This document shows, piece by piece, positions 16,601 to 25,224 of a stretch of DNA of 64,000 nucleotides; position 1 is the stretch's first letter; the number at the start of each line of letters is the position of its first letter. The position numbers and the translations under genes were made by a program. This DNA is from Hyphochytrium catenoides (taxonomy: Eukaryota; Protista; Hyphochytriomycota), in NCBI GenBank assembly GCA_900088475.1, contig FLMG01001570.1, positions 124,001 through 188,000 of the forward strand, written 5' to 3'. Below the pieces are notes generated by a model. The model did no database searches and was not told where the DNA came from. It saw only the letters and a list, made by a program, of their open reading frames with translations.

Positions 16601-17443
16601 ATTCTCGTCCACGGTAATAAACAACTCCTTCTTCAAGACCTCCAGCCGCTCCAAACGCTAGTCTCTCATGGCGGCTCTTGATGAAACGTTGCGCTTCTCT
16701 GCCTTGAATGCAGGGCAAAGCTCCTCCAGATAATAGCAAAGGATGCTACTTCTATCGGTCAAAGTACTACGGACTTTCAATCAGGTGACTTCCTCCGTTA
16801 GCACGAGTATCCATATTACCAATGATAGCCATTAGCAAGCTCTGACACCAGCCCTGGAACATGTGTGCTTTTATGATTGCTAGCTCTCTACAAGTAGCAG
16901 CCACCTGCTGCTGACCAGGCAGCTGGGGCGTGATGATGATTTATTTTGAGTACTACTTCGTAGCTGGTTTGGAGACCGCGAACTCTGCTAAGGAAAGCTT
17001 CACTTCTGATAGCTAATGTTTGGCGGTTTGGCGGAGCTGCTTCTGAAGGGACAAAGATTGGAAATCCAAGACAAAAACGAGGAGTCCACCAGCACGTCCG
17101 AAACAGGTTGGGTGGTACGCCTCCCACCCAGCCTTTGAGTGCTTTTTGAGTCGAACTTGGGAAAGTGGCAGAGGTACGAAGGTTTTTACAGGAGGAGATC
17201 TGGGAGGGATATATTTGAGGAGAGAGCTCGTTTCCACGGCAAAGCTGTGCTCCAAGCCCGTACAAGGCGATGAGTTGGGCATCGGAGGCGCTATCCTAAA
17301 GGAAAGCACGCGCACCACTGGCCCGATTGACAGAGCTGCGATATCACAGGATAGACTGAAGTTGGGCTTGTGATCGTCGTCTGTAGATCAACGAACAGAC
17401 AAGAAAAGACTCGACCGAAACCCCCACAGGAGCCTACTCAACT

Positions 17444-18718
17444 ATGGGGGAGATCATATTGGATCCAGCTATTAGAAATTGGGTTGTCCTGCCTATGGTC
17501 CTCATCATGGTGCTGATCGGCCTGGGGCGCCATTACTTGTCAAAACTGATGGCTACAGAGAACGTGATGAAGGCAGACGAAGCTAGGAACATGTAGGCAG
17601 CTGAATGGCTGATAATGTAATGCTCCAATCCTCTAAAGACATCGTAGGCAAACTCTTGGCCGGGCACAGAAGACCCGCATCAATGGCAGGTTTATAAACC
17701 CCACAGCTTTCGCCATGCGCAAGGTAAAACCTCTTAAGTAAGGGATGATGTTTGGCTGAAGTTTTATTGGACTGCTTGTAGAACTACTTCACTGCGCGGA
17801 AAGGAGACGGGAAAGATGGCGGCAAGGGCGTCTTGCGCGAGAAGGTACGCTGAGGGTATCCGAACTCTGAGTTGTGCTTCCCTAACTTGCCTCGTTGTGC
17901 TCTGTCGAAAGGTTAAGGGTGGGCAGCCCAACCCAATGTCAAATCCCAACCAGATGACCGGAATGTTGAAAAATAACATGACTTTCATGATCCCAAACTT
18001 CGCGATGATGGGCTTGATCAGTATGTTTTTCTCAGGCTTCGTTCTAGGTGCGACTCAACTCCTACCGGGATGGTCTTCAGTGCCTCACTCTTTCTCTCGC
18101 TTCAGTTAAGATTCCATTCCCCCTAACTCATAGGTTCAAGGCAATGCTCCAGCGAGGAATCGAATTAAGGTGAGTCTGTCCTTCATGCAGCTTCAGGCGT
18201 CTAAGCTGATAGAGCTTGTCTTAGTACCCTTGATGCTTCGTACGTATCATCCCTTTCTTGGTACTTCTTGGTGATGTTTGGCATGAGAGGATTTCTCACG
18301 ATCCTCCTCGGAGAACAGACAGGTAAGGAAGATTGTCTAAGAAGTAGCCTTCATATGTTGATGCTTTTGCCGGTCCAGATAATGAAGAAGAAAAAATGAT
18401 GCAGATGCAGATGGGCATGGCAGGAGGCGGTAACATGGCTTTTGATGCAGCTAAAGCTTTCAAGCAGGTGGGAGTCCGTACAGTGTCGGCGAGAACTTAT
18501 CAACCAACTAACCCAGGTGTTATTAGGAGAGAGAAAGCCTCGAGCTTGAAGTTCATAGATGGGCTCTCGATGATATTGAGTATAAGCTTTTAGGGGAGAA
18601 TGCGCCTGTGTCTGAGGGACCCACACCGTCATCAAAGGAAATGCTTCTGGAAGAGACAACAGAGACGCCATCAACTAAGCGGTCAAAGTTCTCTAAAACG
18701 AAGAAGTCGAAGGCCTAG
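17444..18718 (+). CDS. EMC3: ER membrane protein complex subunit 3, 8 exons
   Basis: MGEIILDPAIRNWVVLPMVLIMVLIGLGRHY..MLKNNMTFMIPN..FFSGFVL|VKIPFPLTHRFKAMLQRGIEL|STLDASYVSSLSWYFL. All seven introns are GT-AG and about 55-70 nt. Confidence 0.96.
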
Positions 18719-18796
18719 GCTATTAGAGAATGCTATGGGCGAGTTGCGTTAAGACCTGTTCCGCATATATCGTTCTGTTTCCCCTGGTGAAGGAAC

Positions 18797-20139
18797 CTAC
18801 GTGTCCTTTAACCTCTGCAAAACTGTAGAAACGGAGGCACTAGTCTTCCCTTCCTGCTGGGCATCTAATAGAGCCTTGACCTTCGGCCGCCATTCTCGCC
18901 CTCTGACGTTGATGAACCAATTGTTGACTTGATCTACCGTTATCGAGCACTGCTTTGCAAGCTGCAATTTCTCCTCTTCAGTGGGGTATGGATGGAGGTA
19001 ATGGGCCCTAAGCCATGTCATAAGTGTCGCTCTGATCTCTTTCGAGAGATTTGGTCTCGTTTTTCTCTTGCTCTCTTGGGTAAGAGGCTTAGGTTGCTCC
19101 GCTGAGACCTTCGACGTAGAGGTAAGTGAGCGCTGGGCGGAGTCCATGTTGTCAGTTGCTCTCTTGGTATTTGCCAGAAACAGTGATTTTATCCCTTTTT
19201 GAAGCCTGTCCCGCTCCAAATGAGGGTCCCTCGGTCTAGATCTCGGTTCTGTTACCTCCGCCATGGCCACCTTACGATCGAAATCTTCCAAAAGAATGTC
19301 GACTTCCTTATAGAGCGCAGTCATTAGTGAAGAACTGTTTGGCGAGCCCACCATTGGCTGAAGCCTGCTCAACCTTCCACATGAGCCTTCGACTAGGACT
19401 TCTGGAGCTGACTTCCTAATCCACTCCCCTTCACGACCTGCAAAACGAGTGCACTACCGTTACAGGAACGAAGCCAACCTATTTCAGCAGACCCAACAGC
19501 TATAGGAAAGCCACTTAGCTGTCGATTGGACCCAGAGCGCGATCTCGCGCTACTACTACGGGAACCAGGGACTGGACTTCCGCGGCTTCTCGAAAGACGC
19601 CATGATTGGATGTAGAAGGTTCAGGATTCAGAGCATCAGAAATAGTTGCTAAGTGTTTATTATGAAGAGGTGGTAACTCCTCGACAGCAAGGCTTCTTCC
19701 AGTATTATGGCCTTGATAATCGCCAGTTGTGCCCTGCCGCCTATTGGGAAGAGTCATTGGTGTTTGCCAAGAAGTGCCACCTGTAAAACGAAGCAGCCTG
19801 TCAACGTGAGACTCATGTGCTTTGCAAGCAATAATATTACCTTATGCACAAAATGAAGACTTTCGGCGGTCGATGCTGACGCCCTTCTCTTGGTTGATAC
19901 TGTAGCACAATGATGGTAGCAACAGAGGATCCTCTTTTGTAAGAATGCCCTACGAATAGGAGTGCAGTGGCAAGGAAATCCAATCCGTCATCTTCGTTCG
20001 ATAGATAAATGTACTTCGTGACTATGCGCGCTCTACCTTTATGGTTTACTCCACAAAGTACACGTACCCAGTCATAGGTTGCAGATCTGCACCCGCAGAC
20101 TACGCAACTGTTGTATGAATGAAGCCAAAACCAGGCCAT
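18797..20139 (-). CDS. TALE homeodomain transcription factor A with a PBC-B-like segment (PBX/BELL-side partner); last exon 19437-18797 is secure, 5' exons are tentative
   Basis: The homeodomain at ~19069-18881 reads KRKTRPNLSKEIRATLMTWLRAHYLHPYPTEEEKLQLAKQCSITVDQVNNWFINVRGREW, with the three-residue loop extension, PYP and WFxN. Upstream is EDFDRKVAMAEVTEPRSRPRDPHLERDRLQKGIKSLF. An acceptor TTTTGCAG precedes 19437. Confidence 0.88.
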
Positions 20140-21320
20140 TGCTCAGGAGAACCTGAACAATTGTGCCGCGCTTCCTCCTTTCAATTCCATTCTTTATAGT
20201 GGGAGAGAACGTTTATAATGGGACCGGTTTCGTTGATTGTCGAAGAAGAAGCAAGAACAGCAGGAGTCTTGAGTCACGAATAATCAGAGTGAGCGGCCAG
20301 GGGCCCACACATTACGCTACTAATTAGAACTAGAAAGGCTGTCATGGACAGCTGAAGAAATGAGCAATGCGACAGGACATCATGACTCCAGCAAGCTGAA
20401 AGAAGCGTTAGGACTGCCGTCTTTGGCACTCTGCTAGTACTCTGCTGGTACAAGGGAGGAGAAAGAAGAGAGCCGCGTTTTGTTGCTTCTGTGCTTTCCC
20501 CTAACTTCTTCCCTAGGGGGTTGTGGTGATTACTCCTTCATTACAATTCCTAATCCGGTAGTTACTATTGTTATTGGAACTATCTCCGACAATTAGCAGC
20601 AAATAAAGTTCTGCTATCTGTAGAATGACTTGTATGTTCTACAGTAGTCGTTCTGTGGTTCTACTCGTAGCACCAACAAAAATAAGCGAAATGGTAGTCG
20701 TTCTACAATTCGTCTGAATAGTGGACTTGCTTGTCACAACAACGCTTAAGAAGCGGGCGAAGCTGCCTGAGGCTCTCAAGTAAGAAGTAAGGCAGTCGTG
20801 GACTGGTCCTTGTAATACCGTCGGTTGTGGCTGTGAGGATGATGGCCTCGGATGCCAAGCTCGCCCGAAGGAGGAGAAGCCAGACGCAGTGAGGCAATAG
20901 TGGTACCGTGGAACTCTACCTCAAAAGAAGCCCTCGCGGTAGCGGAGGCTTCTAGTCTTTTATGTGGTCCAAATGGGCTACCACTAGGGGCTCAGAATGT
21001 CTGCGGCAAATGAGAAGCAGCATTGATAAATATTCTTTCCTGTCCATGTTAATGCCTCATCTAGTGGATGGGCGGACGTTCAATGCCCCGTAATTGTTTG
21101 ATAGGAAGCGCTACAGCTGCCTCGTAGATCAAGCAGAGACTGAGAAGAAGTGGCCAGATGAAGAAACAAAAACAGCTGCTTCTGTTGACCTGGACCGTCT
21201 CGAAATCTCGATTTATGTGCCATCTGCAGGCAAAGCTCTTATAAGTTATAAGTATCTACCTAGCATCTTACATTACAGACGACATAAGGCCGAGGAGTGA
21301 TTCCCTGAGGGCATCACCAA

Positions 21321-22692
21321 ATGACTTTGCCCAACAAAAGTCCTGTGCCCTACCAAAGTGATCGAGAAAGAGAGCAATCCGCCACTCTGAGGGAAGCTGC
21401 AAAGGAGGAGTCCATAAGCGTAGGCAGTGATGTTGCGGCTTCAGGAAGAACCTTTTACGGGAGGTCAGGGCCCAGAAGGGAAGTCTGCTCGACTGCCTTA
21501 AAAGGGAATAGCATGGCATGTCATCTGGCCAAAGAGGCGATTGTTCTTCACGAACTGTTTGAAGAGCTTCTCTACTATAGGACTCTAGCCCTCGCGTTAA
21601 CCATGCCAAGCGCTTTCAAAGACAAGGAGAGGCTTTCCAGGTCCAAACCAAAGCTGCTCTCCCAGAGCTTAGAGCAACTTTCATTTATAAGAACCTATAT
21701 AGACGAGCTACGGGCCCAGATGGGTTGCGGCAAACGGCCGCAAGTAAAGCTTGGAACGAATCCAGAGTTAGACGCCTACATGCGCAACGTAATCAAGACG
21801 TTTAGCGACAGATGTCAGGGTGATGACGCTGTAAATTGCTCTAAGTTTGCCCATATACAGCAATTATTGGACCATTCTGCTGCTGAAACTAGGGGTGGAG
21901 ATATAGGAATCGCAGACTTCCTCACAAGACATAAGCAAGACAAATTCATCTCCGGCGACTCCCAGCTGACAACGTTTCAGCCCTGCGTTGACGATGATGA
22001 TGTTAGCATACTCGACAGTTTGACTTCGTCAAGTGAGAGTGTGCTGCAGCCTGATCCACATGACTCCTTAAGGCTGGAGAAAGAGGCTAAGTTAACCCAA
22101 CAATCAAGAACCCACTTAAAGTCTGCAGGAGGTGAGTACTCGCACAGCGCCAGATTGTCCTACGTATACGAACTGCTGCACAATCAGACTAAAAGCTTTT
22201 GAATCTACAGATCGTCAGTCCCAAGAACTGACCTATTCCGGAGGGGGCAGCCAAGGCATGCTTGTCATCACAGCGCCCAACAAGAGGCAACGCCTGCGGA
22301 GATCCTCTCTAGACATTTTGACGGCATGGTTTATGGCCCATATTGACCATCCTTACCCTACCCTACAGGAGCGGAAAAGGCTGGCCAAGGAGTGCGAGCT
22401 CTCAGTGCAGCAGATTCGTGACTGGTTCACGAACATTCGTAAACGCCATTGGGGGCCTATCAAGGATGGCAAAAGAAAGCCACGGACACTTCTGGAGTAC
22501 GTCTTTTATGCAAACCTTGAAGAGAAAAAGCAGCATCAGCGGCAAAAGCAAAGTAAGGTTAAAGGGAGTGGGTCTAACGGCGATAGTCAGCCAAACGGCA
22601 CCCCATCAGCAACACCCAACAGACACAACACCCGCACTACTCTGCCACTGGAACTATGCGAGCTAGAGACCCTCTCGCTCTCCTATTCATAG
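21321..22692 (+). CDS. TALE homeodomain transcription factor B with MEINOX (MEIS/KNOX-type) motifs; exons 21321-22131 and 22211-22692, about 430 aa
   Basis: A phase-1 intron GTGAGT..CTACAG (22132-22210) joins two ORFs. The N-terminal part has KEAIVLHELFEELL (~21531) and NPELDAYMRNVIKTF (~21759). The homeodomain reads NKRQRLRRSSLDILTAWFMAHIDHPYPTLQERKRLAKECELSVQQIRDWFTNIRKRHW. Confidence 0.9.
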
Positions 22693-23351
22693 CAATAGAA
22701 GGGTAGAACATTCCTAATGACATGCCAGACTGCCGTTGCTGCCACGGCAAAATATAAGCTACACTTCAGCCAACCAGCACCTGATATCTATACCAGCTCT
22801 TTCTCTTGCTGCAGAGACCATCCTTTGTTACACTCGGTGATACCACTTACAGTCCATACTGACTAGTCTCTCATCCTGATAGACGGACATGCTGATCAAA
22901 GTTGCTACCTCTGTCAACAGTACACGATGATACTACAGACCTTGAATGGAGCGGTCCACGAGCAAACCTGAAGCTCTCCTTTAAGCGAACCTCACTCCTC
23001 TGCCTCATCAGACCTTGAATAAGATGAGCACACAGGAGCTTCATCAGCCGTGTCGCCTCCTCCAACTCATCCCATGAGCGGTGACATGATGGCCCAAACA
23101 TGACCAGCAAAACACTGCTTTCATCTTCCCCTGTGTTCTATTACCGCGAGCTGTCGTTTTCTAGGTCTCTTCATATCTTCAGCGGCAGTAGTAATACCGC
23201 TATTCAAAGGGCTTTGACGGAGTTAATGCGTAATAGCACGAGTTCGGGCCGGGGTTTTTCTTACTTCAGGATCCTGACTGCTGCTGTAAGGTGTTTCTGA
23301 CTCCTTTCTGACGCTGTCAACATCTCAATCAACGCTGTTGCTCTTTTGCCT

Positions 23352-23451
23352 TCTCTCTCTCTCGCTCTCTCTCTCTCNNNNNNNNNNNNNNNNNNNNNNN
23401 NNNNNNNNNNNNNNNNNNNNTCTCTCTCTCTCTCTCTCTCTCTCGCTCTCT
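23352..23451 (+). repeat. (CT)n microsatellite spanning an assembly gap
   Basis: CT runs flank an N run. Confidence 0.95.
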
Positions 23452-23653
23452 GACTCCGCAGCCCCTCTCCCTTGTCCTTATGTAACAAAGACGTTGCTCC
23501 AAGGCTTGTTGTTTGTCAGATCTCTTCAAGCGCCATCGTTTGCGCATTGTCACCATTTCATAAATAGTCTCAGTCAGCCCTCTTGAGCTCAGTACTCTTT
23601 GCTCCCTTTGCAAGGTCTAGCTTCTGGAAAGCGCATTCTCCACGTCCGCAACG

Positions 23654-24691
23654 ATGCCACGAAAATCTCTTGTTGGAGGCAACTGGAAATGCGTAAGTGC
23701 CTGTCTCTTCCCGCTCGTTCCCCCCTCTCGCTCTCATATAATGGATCCGGATCCGGTTACTTTCTTTCTCTAGAACGGCTCCAGAAGCTCCGTGAAGGCA
23801 TTGGTAGAGACCCTCAATAGCGAAGTGCCACCTAGCAGCATTGACGTTGTGGTGGCTCCCACCTTCCTACACGTAGACTATGTCCTGCAGCACCTCAACA
23901 AGGAGTACCAGGTTGCACTTCAAAACGTCACCCATGTCCACGACACCGGAGGAGCCTACACCGGAGAGATCACTGCGACGATTGCCAAGGGTAAGTTCGT
24001 CCAACTCAGCTTGTCAAATCTGCTGGCAGGCTCAAGAGAGTCCAACCCTGACGATCTGTATGGCGCGCTTTGCTTACCTCGCCGGATCTGTAGATTTCGG
24101 AGTAGGGTGGACTATCACTGGCCACTCTGAGCGCAGGGCCCTGATGAAGGAGAGTGATGAAGATGTCGCCAAGAAGACGAAGGTGGGAAATGCCTCGCTT
24201 TTGCCACCTGCTGCCGGCTGTTCTGTTTTCTTTTCCCTACATGTGCTGACTATTTCGTCTTCCTTGCCCGTTAGTATGCTCTCGATAAGGGCCTGAACGT
24301 CATTCTGTGCATTGGAGAGACGCTCCAGGAGCGTGAGGCCAACAAGACGATGGATGTACTGTACAGACAGATGACACCGGTCATCTCCACCCTCGCCGAG
24401 GAGGACTGGTCCCGGGTGGTAATCGCCTATGAGCCTGTATGGGCTATTGGCACTGGCGTGGTAGCCACCACCCAGCAAGCGCAGGAGGTACATGGGGACC
24501 TCAGGAAATGGCTAGAGGCCCAGTTGTCCGCTGCGATTGCGAGCAATCTTCGGATTCTGTATGGAGGTTCCGTTAAGGGCTCGAACTCCAAGGAACTGAT
24601 TGCGCAGGAAGATATTGACGGCTTCCTGGTTGGAGGAGCGTCTCTGACGGCTGACTTCTTGACCATCATCAAGAACTCTGCCGGTAATTAA
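23654..24691 (+). CDS. TPI: Triosephosphate isomerase, probably cytosolic, 4 exons
   Basis: [13 protein letters not shown]|[38 protein letters not shown] and [10 protein letters not shown] are all present. No N-terminal presequence is seen in frame. Confidence 0.98.
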
Positions 24692-25224
24692 CCAGGCCTC
24701 ACTCTTTCACTTTCTTTATGCACATCCTTAGCGATTGTTTCGCCAAAGCTTTAATCCCGGTATTGAAGCCGTGGAGTTAGGACACAGATTCTTTGTATTC
24801 TGAGCCCACTTTTCACTTTCCTAGCCTTCTTTCAGCTCTTCATTTAGGCTTCAAAGAGAAGTCCGAGAGTAGTGGACGCTAAGCACTTGCCATTATTGGT
24901 CTCTTAACATTTATACATGGCTAGCTCTCACTTGTATATACTCGGCAGCTGCATACTGCATACCCCTGACTCCTTGTTGTTTCTCTTCTCTTCGCTTTTC
25001 TCTCTTGACTCACATCGCTGTTAGCGGGAAGAGGTGCAAAGCTTTGACGAAGAATCTATGACGACAGGCCAGTAAATGGTCGATGCTTGTTTTCCTCTCC
25101 TTGAGGCCAAAAGGCCTCTCATATATTATAACAAAGAAGTAGATACGTACACTAAGCACCTGCGAGAAATCTCAAAGTTAAGGTAGATGAGAATCATCCG
25201 GGTGCTCGACTTAGGCTATGAAGC

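What the first reader, a model, noticed from the sequence alone, without database searches (positions are those of the whole stretch)
18797..22692. Head-to-head cassette of two complementary TALE homeobox genes (PBC-like and MEINOX): candidate mating-type or life-cycle switch locus
Seen in sequence: two dissimilar TALE homeodomain genes are transcribed divergently across a shared ~1.2-1.9 kb spacer, between EMC3 and TPI. They are not a recent tandem duplicate, since their N-terminal regions differ and helix 3 reads WFIN in one and WFTN in the other. Established: TALE factors act as heterodimers of two classes (PBX-MEIS in animals, BELL-KNOX in plants, GSP1-GSM1 triggering zygote development in Chlamydomonas, ORO-SAM directing the sporophyte in Ectocarpus). 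Divergently transcribed HD1/HD2 pairs form basidiomycete mating-type loci. Inference: both partners of the haploid-to-diploid switch are physically linked under one bidirectional promoter in a probable stramenopile-like protist. This could be a fungal-style HD mating cassette, possibly multi-allelic with self/non-self dimerisation, or a co-regulated zygote switch. I do not know of this arrangement being described outside fungi.
Basis: partly seen in the sequence, partly recalled or inferred. Interest (0 to 1): 0.92.

Follow-up and report, generated by a model that had tools for sequence, protein, structure and literature searches.

The report
Conserved head-to-head TALE homeobox gene pair
Two different TALE homeobox transcription-factor genes lie head-to-head here, and the same arrangement occurs in water moulds (oomycetes), where the matching genes switch on strongly during mating; this makes them likely partner regulators of sexual development, not a proven mating-type locus.

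Summary
Gene A (minus strand, 18797-19757) and gene B (plus strand, 21321-22692) are both TALE homeodomain genes. They are transcribed divergently, with 1563 bp between their start codons, and lie between EMC3 and TPI. Their homeodomains are only about 40% identical, and an AU test rejects them as sister sequences (p = 0.0016).

Each gene has its own orthologue group in oomycetes. The head-to-head A/B pair recurs in Saprolegnia diclina (with EMC3 beside A), in Aphanomyces stellatus, and on a 59-kb metagenome scaffold with the same EMC3-A-B order. In Pythium oligandrum the two genes lie about 344 kb apart, and in Phytophthora infestans no A-type gene lies within 10 kb of B. One uncultured organism carries both homeodomain types in one reading direction, apparently as one gene.

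The P. infestans orthologues, PITG_01080 (A) and PITG_01135 (B), are the only two homeobox factors among genes induced more than 10-fold in all three mating crosses.

Class labels fare unevenly. B has weak but consistent MEINOX-like signals. The "PBC-like" label for A failed every test.

DNA runs show two haplotypes. The N-terminal coding parts differ by 12-15% and the spacer is largely unalignable, yet B's homeodomain exon is identical. This resembles a fungal b-locus, but the genome may be about 2.75% heterozygous throughout, so the mating-type reading stays unproven.

No RNA evidence was obtained.

The parts
17444..18601 (+). EMC3 gene (flank), tail-to-tail with gene A; part of the conserved block
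   Evidence: Pfam EMC3_TMCO1 on 17816-18106. tblastn of the L031 EMC3 exons hits 17444-17593, 17930-18046, 18105-18167 and 18527-18601.
18797..19437 (-). Gene A (A-type TALE), last exon including the stop codon: helical pre-homeodomain region, homeodomain and conserved C-terminal tail
   Evidence: ORF; Homeobox_KN E = 1.5e-18; acceptor TTTTGCAG at 19438. The tail resembles oomycete A-type tails.
18875..19060 (-). Homeodomain of A (TALE, LHPYP loop; helix 3 NNWFINVRGREWRP)
   Evidence: In the tree it lies in a clade with oomycete A-types, support 100/97.
19438..19531 (-). Inferred intron of A (94 nt, GTCCAA..TTTTGCAG, phase 1)
   Evidence: It is the only in-frame pairing that uses the best acceptor. 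There is no RNA support.
19532..19757 (-). Gene A exon 1, starting with MTLPN
   Evidence: ATG at 19757. The MT(L/F)PN start is shared by A- and B-type relatives.
19758..21320 (.). Shared 1563-bp spacer between the two start codons, the presumed bidirectional regulatory region. It holds a possible 5'UTR intron of A at 19781-19840.
   Evidence: Sequence. No Pfam, Rfam or tRNA hit inside it. The second haplotype cannot be aligned at 80% identity over about 19665-20683.
21321..22131 (+). Gene B (B-type TALE) exon 1, starting with MTLPN; helical MEINOX-like region at about 21510-21896
   Evidence: ORF. AF2 helices at residues 64-192. Foldseek top hits are enriched for N-terminal parts of MEIS/PKNOX/KNOX proteins. 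The H77-x-L79 block aligns with the B-type family block.
22132..22210 (+). Intron of B (79 nt, GTGAGT..CTACAG, phase 1)
   Evidence: Sequence. The spliced ORF is 431 aa with no stop.
22211..22692 (+). Gene B exon 2: homeodomain (22282-22467), B-type tail motif (22468-22521) and low-complexity C-terminus
   Evidence: Homeobox_KN E = 6.1e-16. The RKRHW motif and the G-K/R-x-PR-x-LL-E/D-x-V tail are shared with B-types. It falls in the B-type clade, support 86/73.
23792..24691 (+). TPI gene (flank); not part of the conserved block
   Evidence: Pfam TIM, E = 2.7e-38. TPI is not next to B in L010 or L031.

Best explanation
This is an ancient, conserved cassette of two distinct TALE homeodomain transcription-factor genes, inherited from the common ancestor of this organism and the oomycetes. 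The organism appears to be a stramenopile related to, but outside, the sampled oomycetes. A-type has a WFINxRxRxW(K/R)P helix 3 and a two-helix region before the homeodomain. B-type has an RKRHW helix 3 and a MEIS/KNOX-like helical N-terminal region. The genes are transcribed divergently from a shared spacer, which would give coordinated expression. Most likely the two proteins act together, probably as a heterodimer as other TALE pairs do, to switch on a sexual or zygote (resting-spore) programme. Shown here: the gene anatomy, the two separate orthologue groups, the conserved EMC3-A-B order, a natural A-B fusion, and published mating induction of the Phytophthora orthologues. Inferred: co-regulation from the spacer, heterodimerisation, and the function in this organism.
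For: Both genes carry TALE domains. A and B fall in separate clades together with their oomycete orthologues, 100/97 for A and 86/73 for B, and the AU test rejects A+B as sisters. Head-to-head A/B pairs occur in Aphanomyces stellatus with 184 bp between the genes; in Saprolegnia diclina with 101 bp and EMC3 tail-to-tail with A; and on metagenome scaffold L031 in the order EMC3(+), A(-), B(+) with a 432-bp spacer. Contigs L005-L007 carry an A-type homeodomain followed on the same strand by a B-type homeodomain, a fusion that suggests the two act together. PITG_01080 is A-type by its published DNA-binding-domain sequence and PITG_01135 is B-type (P0197). [quoted passage not shown] Both families share the N-terminal MT(L/F)PN motif: 38 of 62 B-types and 4 of 7 A-types, against 1 of 141 other TALE proteins. 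B's N-terminal part, which has no homeodomain, draws MEIS3, STM, PKNOX2 and KNOX N-terminal regions as 12 of its top 22 Foldseek hits.
Against: There is no expression data for this organism: no RNA run was listed and two candidate runs laid nothing on the locus. No interaction test was possible. Pfam finds no KNOX1/2, Meis_PKNOX_N, PBC or POX domain in any A- or B-type protein. The hhalign and Foldseek signals for B are individually non-significant (E = 0.02-1.4). The pair is split by about 344 kb in Pythium oligandrum, and in P. infestans no A-type gene lies within 10 kb of B, so tight linkage is not essential. The 1.56-kb spacer here is far longer than in the relatives. No motif of 8 bases or more is shared by three or more of the spacers.
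Confidence: 0.6

Rival explanations
1. It is a basidiomycete-style homeodomain compatibility locus. Each haplotype would carry its own A and B alleles, whose variable N-terminal parts allow dimers only between products of different haplotypes. The active factor would then report heterozygosity or the outcrossed diploid state and define mating types.
For: Two haplotypes are present at about equal depth in both DNA runs. B exon 1 at 21710-22126 has 49 differences plus 3 gaps in 417 bases (12%). A at 19249-19385 has 17 differences in 137 bases, and at 19484-19664 has 28 in 181. About 1 kb of the spacer and the first 55 codons or so of B cannot be aligned at 80% identity. B's homeodomain exon (22097-22629) is identical in run X1, and the EMC3 stretch 18000-18448 shows no heterozygous site. 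In 33 codons of A's best-predicted helix, the second allele has 11 amino-acid-changing and 6 silent codon changes. A variable N-terminus, a constant homeodomain and divergent transcription are the hallmarks of the Ustilago b locus (background knowledge).
Against: If the genome is Hyphochytrium-like, its SNP frequency is about 0.0275 on most scaffolds and the uncollapsed assembly is 107 Mb against 65.7 Mb. The mean divergence of about 3% over the 5.2 kb is then ordinary, and a mosaic of deep and identical patches may be genome-wide. Only one stretch could be laid, so there is no background measure. Both genes are TALE, whereas the fungal pair is TALE plus non-TALE. The head-to-head pair persists in Saprolegnia and Aphanomyces, which are largely self-fertile (background knowledge). 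S. diclina and S. parasitica B N-termini are almost identical. In Phytophthora species several strains share one 90% identity cluster. The pair is unlinked in Peronosporales. The ratio of 11 changing to 6 silent codon changes fits relaxed constraint as well as diversifying selection.
Confidence: 0.12
2. The two genes are neighbours by history alone. An ancient inverted duplication left two TALE paralogues that now work independently, and the adjacency survives only because the intergenic gaps are tiny.
For: The shared MT(L/F)PN start suggests a common origin (hhalign of the two N-termini, E = 0.0028). The relatives have very short spacers and overlapping or near-overlapping 3' ends with EMC3, which leaves few places for breakpoints. 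The published DNA motifs of PITG_01080 and PITG_01135 share only TCA. The pair has been split in Pythium and Phytophthora.
Against: After the split, the P. infestans orthologues are still co-induced in mating. A natural A-B fusion exists. The order is kept here even with a 1.56-kb spacer. TALE proteins characteristically act in heterodimers of two classes (PMC6219170, PMC6368402).
Confidence: 0.2
3. The second 'haplotype' is not an allele but a paralogous copy of the whole cassette elsewhere in the genome.
For: Contig depths alone cannot separate two alleles at half depth from two loci at full depth.
Against: The divergent contigs merge into shared contigs on both sides and inside the locus (18000-18448 and 22097-22629). 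Depths of the split contigs add up to those of the merged ones in two runs. A diploid, highly heterozygous genome is the simpler reading.
Confidence: 0.05

Closest known systems
Oomycete TALE genes PITG_01080 (A-type) and PITG_01135 (B-type) of Phytophthora infestans, and their Saprolegnia and Aphanomyces orthologues (for example SDRG_04313)
   Same: They fall in the same homeodomain clades, share the MT(L/F)PN start and share the C-terminal tails. In Saprolegniales they have the same head-to-head order, with EMC3 beside A. The Phytophthora genes are strongly mating-induced.
   Different: Homeodomain identity to the window genes is only 54-63%. The window's N-terminal regions are much longer and more divergent, each gene has an intron, and the spacer is 1563 bp against 101-184 bp. 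In Phytophthora and Pythium the two genes are unlinked. The papers found do not treat them as a pair.
KNOX/BELL of plants and green algae (GSM1/GSP1), and ORO/SAM of the brown alga Ectocarpus
   Same: Each is a pair of unlike TALE homeodomain proteins that heterodimerise and trigger the diploid or zygote programme. B shares the RKRHW helix-3 signature and weak MEINOX-like N-terminal features with KNOX.
   Different: Those partner genes are, to my knowledge, not adjacent, and are typically expressed in different gametes. Here both lie on one haplotype facing a shared spacer. Pfam recognises no KNOX, ELK or POX domain. Orthology to ORO/SAM was not tested.
Basidiomycete HD mating-type loci (bE/bW of Ustilago, HD1/HD2 of mushrooms)
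   Same: Both are divergently transcribed pairs of unlike homeodomain genes. In the two haplotypes seen here, the alleles have a variable N-terminal part and a conserved homeodomain.
   Different: The fungal pair is one TALE and one typical homeodomain, whereas here both are TALE. Multi-allelism, non-self-only dimerisation and linkage to mating type are not shown here, and comparative evidence points away from them.
MEIS/PBX of animals
   Same: Both are TALE heterodimers in which a MEINOX-type partner binds through N-terminal helices. MEIS and PKNOX N-termini are the top Foldseek hits for B.
   Different: A has no PBC domain and lacks the PBX helix-3 signature. The animal genes are unlinked.

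Membership tests
TALE homeodomain superclass | Homeodomain with a three-residue extension in the loop between helices 1 and 2 (P-Y-P), and a WF.N.R helix 3 | tested here: met
   Pfam Homeobox_KN, E = 1.5e-18 (A) and 6.1e-16 (B). HPYP is present in both.
Pseudofungal A-type / B-type TALE orthologue groups | Homeodomain falls in the respective clade | tested here: met
   A falls with the oomycete A-types at 100/97. B falls with the B-types at 86/73, which is moderate support.
Pseudofungal A-type / B-type TALE orthologue groups | N-terminal MT(L/F)PN motif and class-specific tail after the homeodomain | tested here: met
   Both window genes start with MTLPN. The motif occurs in 38/62 B-types, 4/7 A-types and 1/141 other TALE proteins. 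The tails align.
Pseudofungal A-type / B-type TALE orthologue groups | EMC3 - A - B gene order with A and B head-to-head | tested here: met
   Found in S. diclina L010, scaffold L031, A. stellatus L009 (pair only) and the window.
MEINOX class (MEIS/PKNOX/KNOX), proposed for gene B | Bipartite helical domain (HR1/HR2 or KNOX1/KNOX2) N-terminal to the homeodomain | tested here: inconclusive
   Pfam finds no hit even at E <= 10. In hhalign the B-type 'H-P-L..LL' block lands on KNOX1 of P0041 (E = 0.4) and on residues 18-31, near the N-terminus, of the MEIS-type protein P0015 (E = 0.019). In Foldseek, 12 of the top 22 Swiss-Prot hits are MEIS/PKNOX/KNOX N-termini, but with E = 0.2-1.4 and TM about 0.2.
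MEINOX class (MEIS/PKNOX/KNOX), proposed for gene B | Homeodomain groups with KNOX/MEIS; ELK domain present (KNOX) | tested here: not met
   The B clade is separate from the KNOX and MEIS reference sequences in the homeodomain tree, whose deep nodes are unresolved. Pfam finds no ELK domain.
PBC class (PBX), proposed for gene A | PBC-A/PBC-B domain before the homeodomain, and the PBX-type helix 3 (GNKRIRYKK) | tested here: not met
   Pfam finds no PBC hit. Foldseek of the pre-homeodomain model returns no PBX hit, with best E = 4.2. Helix 3 reads INVRGREWRP. A does not group with the PBX reference.
BELL class, alternative for gene A | POX (SKY+BELL) domain, and WFINARVRLWKP helix 3 | tested here: inconclusive
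   No POX hit; hhalign against the POX domain of P0096 gives E = 0.79. The helix-3 pattern WFINxRxRxW(K/R)P is BELL-like. The tree does not resolve the question.
Basidiomycete-type HD mating-type locus | Divergently transcribed pair of unlike homeodomain genes | tested here: met
Basidiomycete-type HD mating-type locus | One TALE-type (HD1) and one typical (HD2) homeodomain | tested here: not met
   Both genes are Homeobox_KN / TALE.
Basidiomycete-type HD mating-type locus | Many alleles with a variable N-terminal specificity domain and a constant remainder | tested here: inconclusive
   Two haplotypes show that pattern. However, no genome-wide background could be measured, only one strain was seen, and the oomycete orthologues show no such variability.
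Basidiomycete-type HD mating-type locus | Dimers form only between products of different alleles; the locus segregates with mating type | not testable with these tools
   This needs interaction assays and crosses.
Brown-algal ORO / SAM | ORO- or SAM-specific domains outside the homeodomain, and conserved homeobox intron positions | not tested
PMC6368402 found such domains only in brown algae and one raphidophyte.

The most novel reading that the evidence does not exclude
The cassette is a true self/non-self homeodomain compatibility locus in a stramenopile. Under this reading the two deeply diverged haplotypes, with variable N-terminal helices and spacer but an identical homeodomain exon, are maintained by balancing selection, and only cross-haplotype A-B dimers are active. 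That would place b-locus logic, built from two TALE genes, outside the fungi, and would suggest that linked HD pairs are an ancestral eukaryotic way of sensing the diploid state.
Probability: 0.12. Interest if true: 0.9.

Novelty: new variant of a known kind. Interest (0 to 1): 0.66.

Why it matters
TALE homeodomain heterodimers control the switch from haploid to diploid in plants, green algae and brown algae. In those lineages the partner genes are, to my knowledge, unlinked and kept apart in different gametes. Here the two candidate partners are physically coupled in a divergent cassette. The cassette has kept its order, even its EMC3 neighbour, since before this lineage and the oomycetes diverged, and its Phytophthora orthologues are the top mating-induced homeobox factors.

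This gives a concrete, testable candidate for the zygote or oospore master switch in oomycetes and their relatives. These are diploid-dominant organisms, many of them major pathogens, whose sexual regulation is poorly known. It also allows a direct comparison with fungal HD mating loci. The conserved MT(L/F)PN start on both partners hints at a shared, undescribed regulatory signal.

Tried and rejected
- **Word-indexed protein search:** nothing was found for B exon 1 or for A's last exon, so I switched to the exhaustive HMMER search.
- **ESM Atlas:** B's N-terminal part gave nothing useful, with best scores of 0.61-0.67.
- **Pfam at E up to 10:** no MEINOX, PBC or POX domain in any A- or B-type protein.
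- **RNA evidence:** no RNA run was listed for the locus. Runs X4 and X5, found through TPI, laid nothing.
- **Recent inverted duplication:** only short chance repeats occur in the locus.
- **RNA genes:** Rfam and tRNA scans of 17000-25000 were empty.
- **Shared spacer motif:** no word of 8 bases or more is shared by three or more of the four spacers compared.
- **Metagenome scan with a B-type profile:** 17 loci were found, none with a second homeodomain nearby.
- **Contig look-ups:** P0135 and P0128 are not on record.
- **Classification by homeodomain tree:** 62 columns cannot resolve the deep nodes against KNOX, BELL, MEIS and PBX.
- **Organism identity:** it could not be checked. Hyphochytrium is a conjecture based on phylogenetic position, diploid heterozygosity and assembly sizes.
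- **Literature:** one search was wasted on too lax a query.
Full report
**1. What is in the sequence**

The ORF at 18797-19372 (minus strand) and the ORF at 22132-22692 (plus strand) each contain a TALE-type homeodomain. Pfam Homeobox_KN gives E = 1.5e-18 and 6.1e-16. A tblastn scan with both homeodomains finds no third one in the 64-kb window.

Gene B is simple to model. An ATG at 21321 opens an 811-base exon. A 79-base GTGAGT..CTACAG intron (22132-22210) joins it in phase to the homeodomain exon, 22211-22692. The product is 431 aa.

Gene A starts at the ATG at 19757. Its first exon runs into a stop unless an intron is removed. The best acceptor (TTTTGCAG, exon from 19437) pairs in frame only with a GTCCAA donor after 19532, which gives 288 aa. 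This splice is inferred, because no RNA data could be obtained.

Both start codons are backed by an unexpected feature: both proteins begin with MTLPN, as do most of their relatives (section 2).

The start codons are 1563 bp apart. The flanking genes are EMC3 on A's 3' side and TPI downstream of B. The homeodomains are 40-43% identical, and the DNA shows no inverted repeat beyond chance matches.

**2. Relatives**

The word-indexed protein search found nothing. An exhaustive HMMER search with a profile of the two homeodomains returned 11,568 TALE proteins.

Sorting their homeodomains by identity separated two sets.
- **A-type** has helix 3 NNWFINxRxRxW(K/R)P and a conserved tail after the homeodomain.
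- **B-type** has helix 3 NWF(A/T)NMRKRHWxP followed by a G-K/R-x-P-R-x-L-L-E/D-x-V tail.

A further search with the Saprolegnia B-type protein found B-types in Saprolegnia, Achlya, Thraustotheca, Aphanomyces, Lagenidium, Pythium, Globisporangium, Phytophthora, Peronospora, Bremia, Plasmopara and others.

In a maximum-likelihood tree of 84 homeodomains:
- Window A sits in a clade with the oomycete A-types (support 100/97).
- Window B sits with the B-types (86/73).
- The two clades are separate.
- Forcing window A and B together costs 48 log-likelihood units and is rejected (AU p = 0.0016).

Identity to the oomycete homeodomains is 54-63%. This appears lower than among the oomycetes themselves (about 72-83%, from reading the hit alignments). 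The organism therefore seems to lie outside the sampled oomycetes while sharing both orthologue groups with them.

The start motif MT(L/F)P occurs in 38 of 62 B-types and 4 of 7 A-types, but in only 1 of 141 other TALE proteins fetched. The codons differ between A and B here, so the conservation acts on the protein.

**3. Conserved linkage**

Genomic context was fetched for the nearest relatives.

| Source | Arrangement |
|---|---|
| Aphanomyces stellatus | B-type (minus) and A-type (plus) head-to-head, 184 bp apart, both starting MTLPN |
| Saprolegnia diclina | Same pair, 101 bp apart; EMC3 tail-to-tail with A, as in the window |
| Metagenome scaffold L031 (59 kb, GC 42%) | EMC3(+), A-type(-), B-type(+), 432-bp spacer |
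| Pythium oligandrum | Both genes on one contig, about 344 kb apart, same orientation; B still 8 kb from EMC3; A next to SLC35F and RanBP1, which lie beside EMC3 in L031 |
| Phytophthora infestans | No A-type within 10 kb of B |

Species names come from PMC8308905.

The ancestral state thus seems to be EMC3-A-B. It is kept in this organism, in the L031 organism and in Saprolegniales, and is broken in the Pythium/Phytophthora lineage.

Three metagenome contigs (L005-L007) carry an A-type homeodomain followed about 190 bases downstream, on the same strand, by a B-type homeodomain interrupted by an intron. This looks like a natural A-B fusion.

A metagenome scan with a B-type profile found 17 more loci, none with a partner nearby. 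Linkage is therefore far from universal.

**4. What class are they?**

*Gene B.* Pfam recognises neither KNOX1/2, ELK nor Meis_PKNOX_N in the window proteins or any relative, even at E <= 10. Three weaker signals point the same way:
- All B-types share two helical blocks, an H-x-L..LL block and a later amphipathic helix. MAFFT aligns window B's H77-E-L79 to the first block.
- In hhalign the first block lands exactly on the KNOX1 domain of a plant KNOX (E = 0.4) and on residues 18-31, near the N-terminus, of a MEIS-type protein (P0015; E = 0.019).
- An AlphaFold model of B exon 1 (no homeodomain; pLDDT 63; helices over residues 64-192) was searched against 550,000 Swiss-Prot models. It returned MEIS3-A, MEIS3-B and SHOOT MERISTEMLESS as the top three. 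MEIS, PKNOX or KNOX N-terminal regions made up 12 of the top 22 hits, though with E = 0.2-1.4 and TM about 0.2.

I read this as a weak but real MEINOX-like signal, not as membership.

*Gene A.* The region before the homeodomain models as two long helices. Foldseek finds nothing related to PBX or BELL, with best E = 4.2, and hhalign to a BELL POX domain gives E = 0.79. "PBC-like" is not supported. A's helix 3 is BELL-like in pattern only.

The homeodomain tree cannot resolve the relation of either clade to KNOX, BELL, MEIS or PBX.

**5. Function**

Two papers on P. infestans bear directly on this.
- PMC11267843 reports that all five homeodomain factors are highly expressed in mating, "especially" PITG_01080 and PITG_01135.
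- Its supplement prints their DNA-binding constructs. PITG_01080 has the A-type helix 3 and tail, and PITG_01135 is the B-type protein P0197.
- PMC5999078 reports 29-fold and 60-fold induction in mating for two homeobox factors.
[quoted passage not shown] "PITG_01335" in that paper's text is evidently a misprint.

Neither paper treats the two as a pair. I found no paper describing a linked TALE pair in any stramenopile.

Taken together:
- two unlike TALE classes;
- ancient linkage;
- a natural fusion;
- co-induction in mating even after the genes were separated;
- the known habit of TALE proteins to act as heterodimers of two classes (PMC6219170, PMC6368402).

The best explanation is therefore a partner pair that drives a sexual or zygote programme, with the shared spacer giving coordinated expression. 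Heterodimerisation, co-regulation and the role in this organism are inferences.

**6. The mating-type idea**

Laying Logan contigs of two DNA runs of the organism on 18000-23200 showed two haplotypes at about equal depth. In run X2 the split contigs have depth about 200 each and the merged contigs 323-355. In run X1 the figures are 13-21 and 29-33.

| Region | Divergence between haplotypes |
|---|---|
| EMC3, 18000-18448 | No heterozygous site |
| B homeodomain exon, 22097-22629 | Identical in X1 |
| A, 19249-19385 | 12% |
| A, 19484-19664 | 15% |
| B exon 1, 21710-22126 | 12% |
| B's first 55 codons or so, and about 1 kb of spacer | Align only in fragments at 80% identity |

From the listed differences I rebuilt 33 codons of the second A allele (19136-19234, in the best-predicted helix). 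They show 11 amino-acid-changing and 6 silent codon changes, and 67% protein identity.

A variable N-terminus, a constant homeodomain and a divergent promoter are just what fungal b loci show. The evidence against it is stronger:
- Both genes are TALE, which is not the fungal HD1/HD2 design.
- The cassette is kept in Saprolegnia and Aphanomyces, which by background knowledge are mostly self-fertile.
- S. diclina and S. parasitica B proteins are almost identical in the N-terminal part.
- Several Phytophthora species have many strains in one 90% identity cluster.
- The genes are unlinked in Phytophthora.

The background may also be very high. The organism's position as a relative of the oomycetes, its diploid heterozygosity and the contig totals of 84-101 Mb fit Hyphochytrium catenoides. 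For that species the authors report a SNP frequency of about 0.0275 on most scaffolds, and a 107-Mb uncollapsed assembly against 65.7 Mb collapsed. This identity is a conjecture that I could not verify. If it holds, the mean of about 3% over this stretch (159-175 variant places in 5.2 kb) is ordinary, and a mosaic of identical and deeply diverged patches may be the rule.

Only one read-laying run was allowed, so I have no measure for other regions. I put the compatibility-locus reading at about 0.12.

**7. Verdict**

Compared with what is known, this is a new variant of a known kind. It is a TALE partner pair, but physically coupled in a divergent cassette that is conserved between this organism and Saprolegniales oomycetes, with a shared N-terminal motif that has not been described in the papers found.

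It makes one question directly testable: do diploid-dominant stramenopiles use a TALE dimer as a sexual switch? It also gives oomycete biology two named candidate genes.

Noticed in passing
window 19743-19757 (-) and 21321-21335 (+); relatives P0126, P0143, P0145, P0150, P0151-P0162, P0209: Both partner families begin with the same N-terminal motif, MT(L/F)PN, often extended to MTLPNRxxY. It occurs in 38/62 B-types and 4/7 A-types but in only 1/141 other TALE proteins. The codons differ between A and B, so selection acts on the peptide. It may be a shared degradation, modification or localisation signal. No paper was found that mentions it.
   Followed up: partly
L005:560-1159, L006:622-1221, L007:437-1036: Metagenome contigs of an unknown eukaryote (GC 57%) carry an A-type homeodomain and, about 190 bases downstream on the same strand, a B-type homeodomain split by a short intron. 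This appears to be a natural A-B fusion protein.
   Followed up: partly
window 18000-23200: Two haplotypes at equal depth form a sharp mosaic. There is no heterozygosity at 18000-18448 or 22097-22629, 6% at 18419-18640, 12-15% in the N-terminal coding parts of A and B, about 1 kb of spacer that cannot be aligned, and several indels at 22690-23033. Whether such mosaics are genome-wide could not be checked.
   Followed up: partly
L008 and L012 (Pythium oligandrum SPLM01000108.1), L011, L031: The L031 scaffold has the order SLC35F, RanBP1, ubiquitin, EMC3, A, B. In Pythium oligandrum and in the L011 organism, A sits next to SLC35F and RanBP1, and in Pythium oligandrum B stays within 8 kb of EMC3. 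The break-up of the cassette therefore seems to be a local rearrangement of one ancestral block.
   Followed up: partly
L020, L022-L024 (JGI metagenome contigs, GC 47-48%): B-like genes with NWFINMRKRHWTPM and a tail (NGKRRPRTFLDYII) closer to the window's B tail than the oomycete tails are. No second homeodomain lies in the flanks held for these loci (up to 6 kb on each side). The organism is unknown.
   Followed up: no
window 19781-19840 (-): A clean GTAATA..TTTTACAG intron-like segment lies just upstream of gene A's start codon, suggesting a spliced 5' UTR. The 100-codon ORF at 19837-20139 upstream of it has no Pfam match.
   Followed up: no
window 23338-23500: A (GA)n/(CT)n microsatellite with a run of N (an assembly gap) lies between gene B and TPI.
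   Followed up: no
PMC5999078 main text versus its S5 Table: The text names the second mating-induced homeobox gene PITG_01335, but the supplementary table lists PITG_01135. The text appears to contain a misprint.
   Followed up: yes
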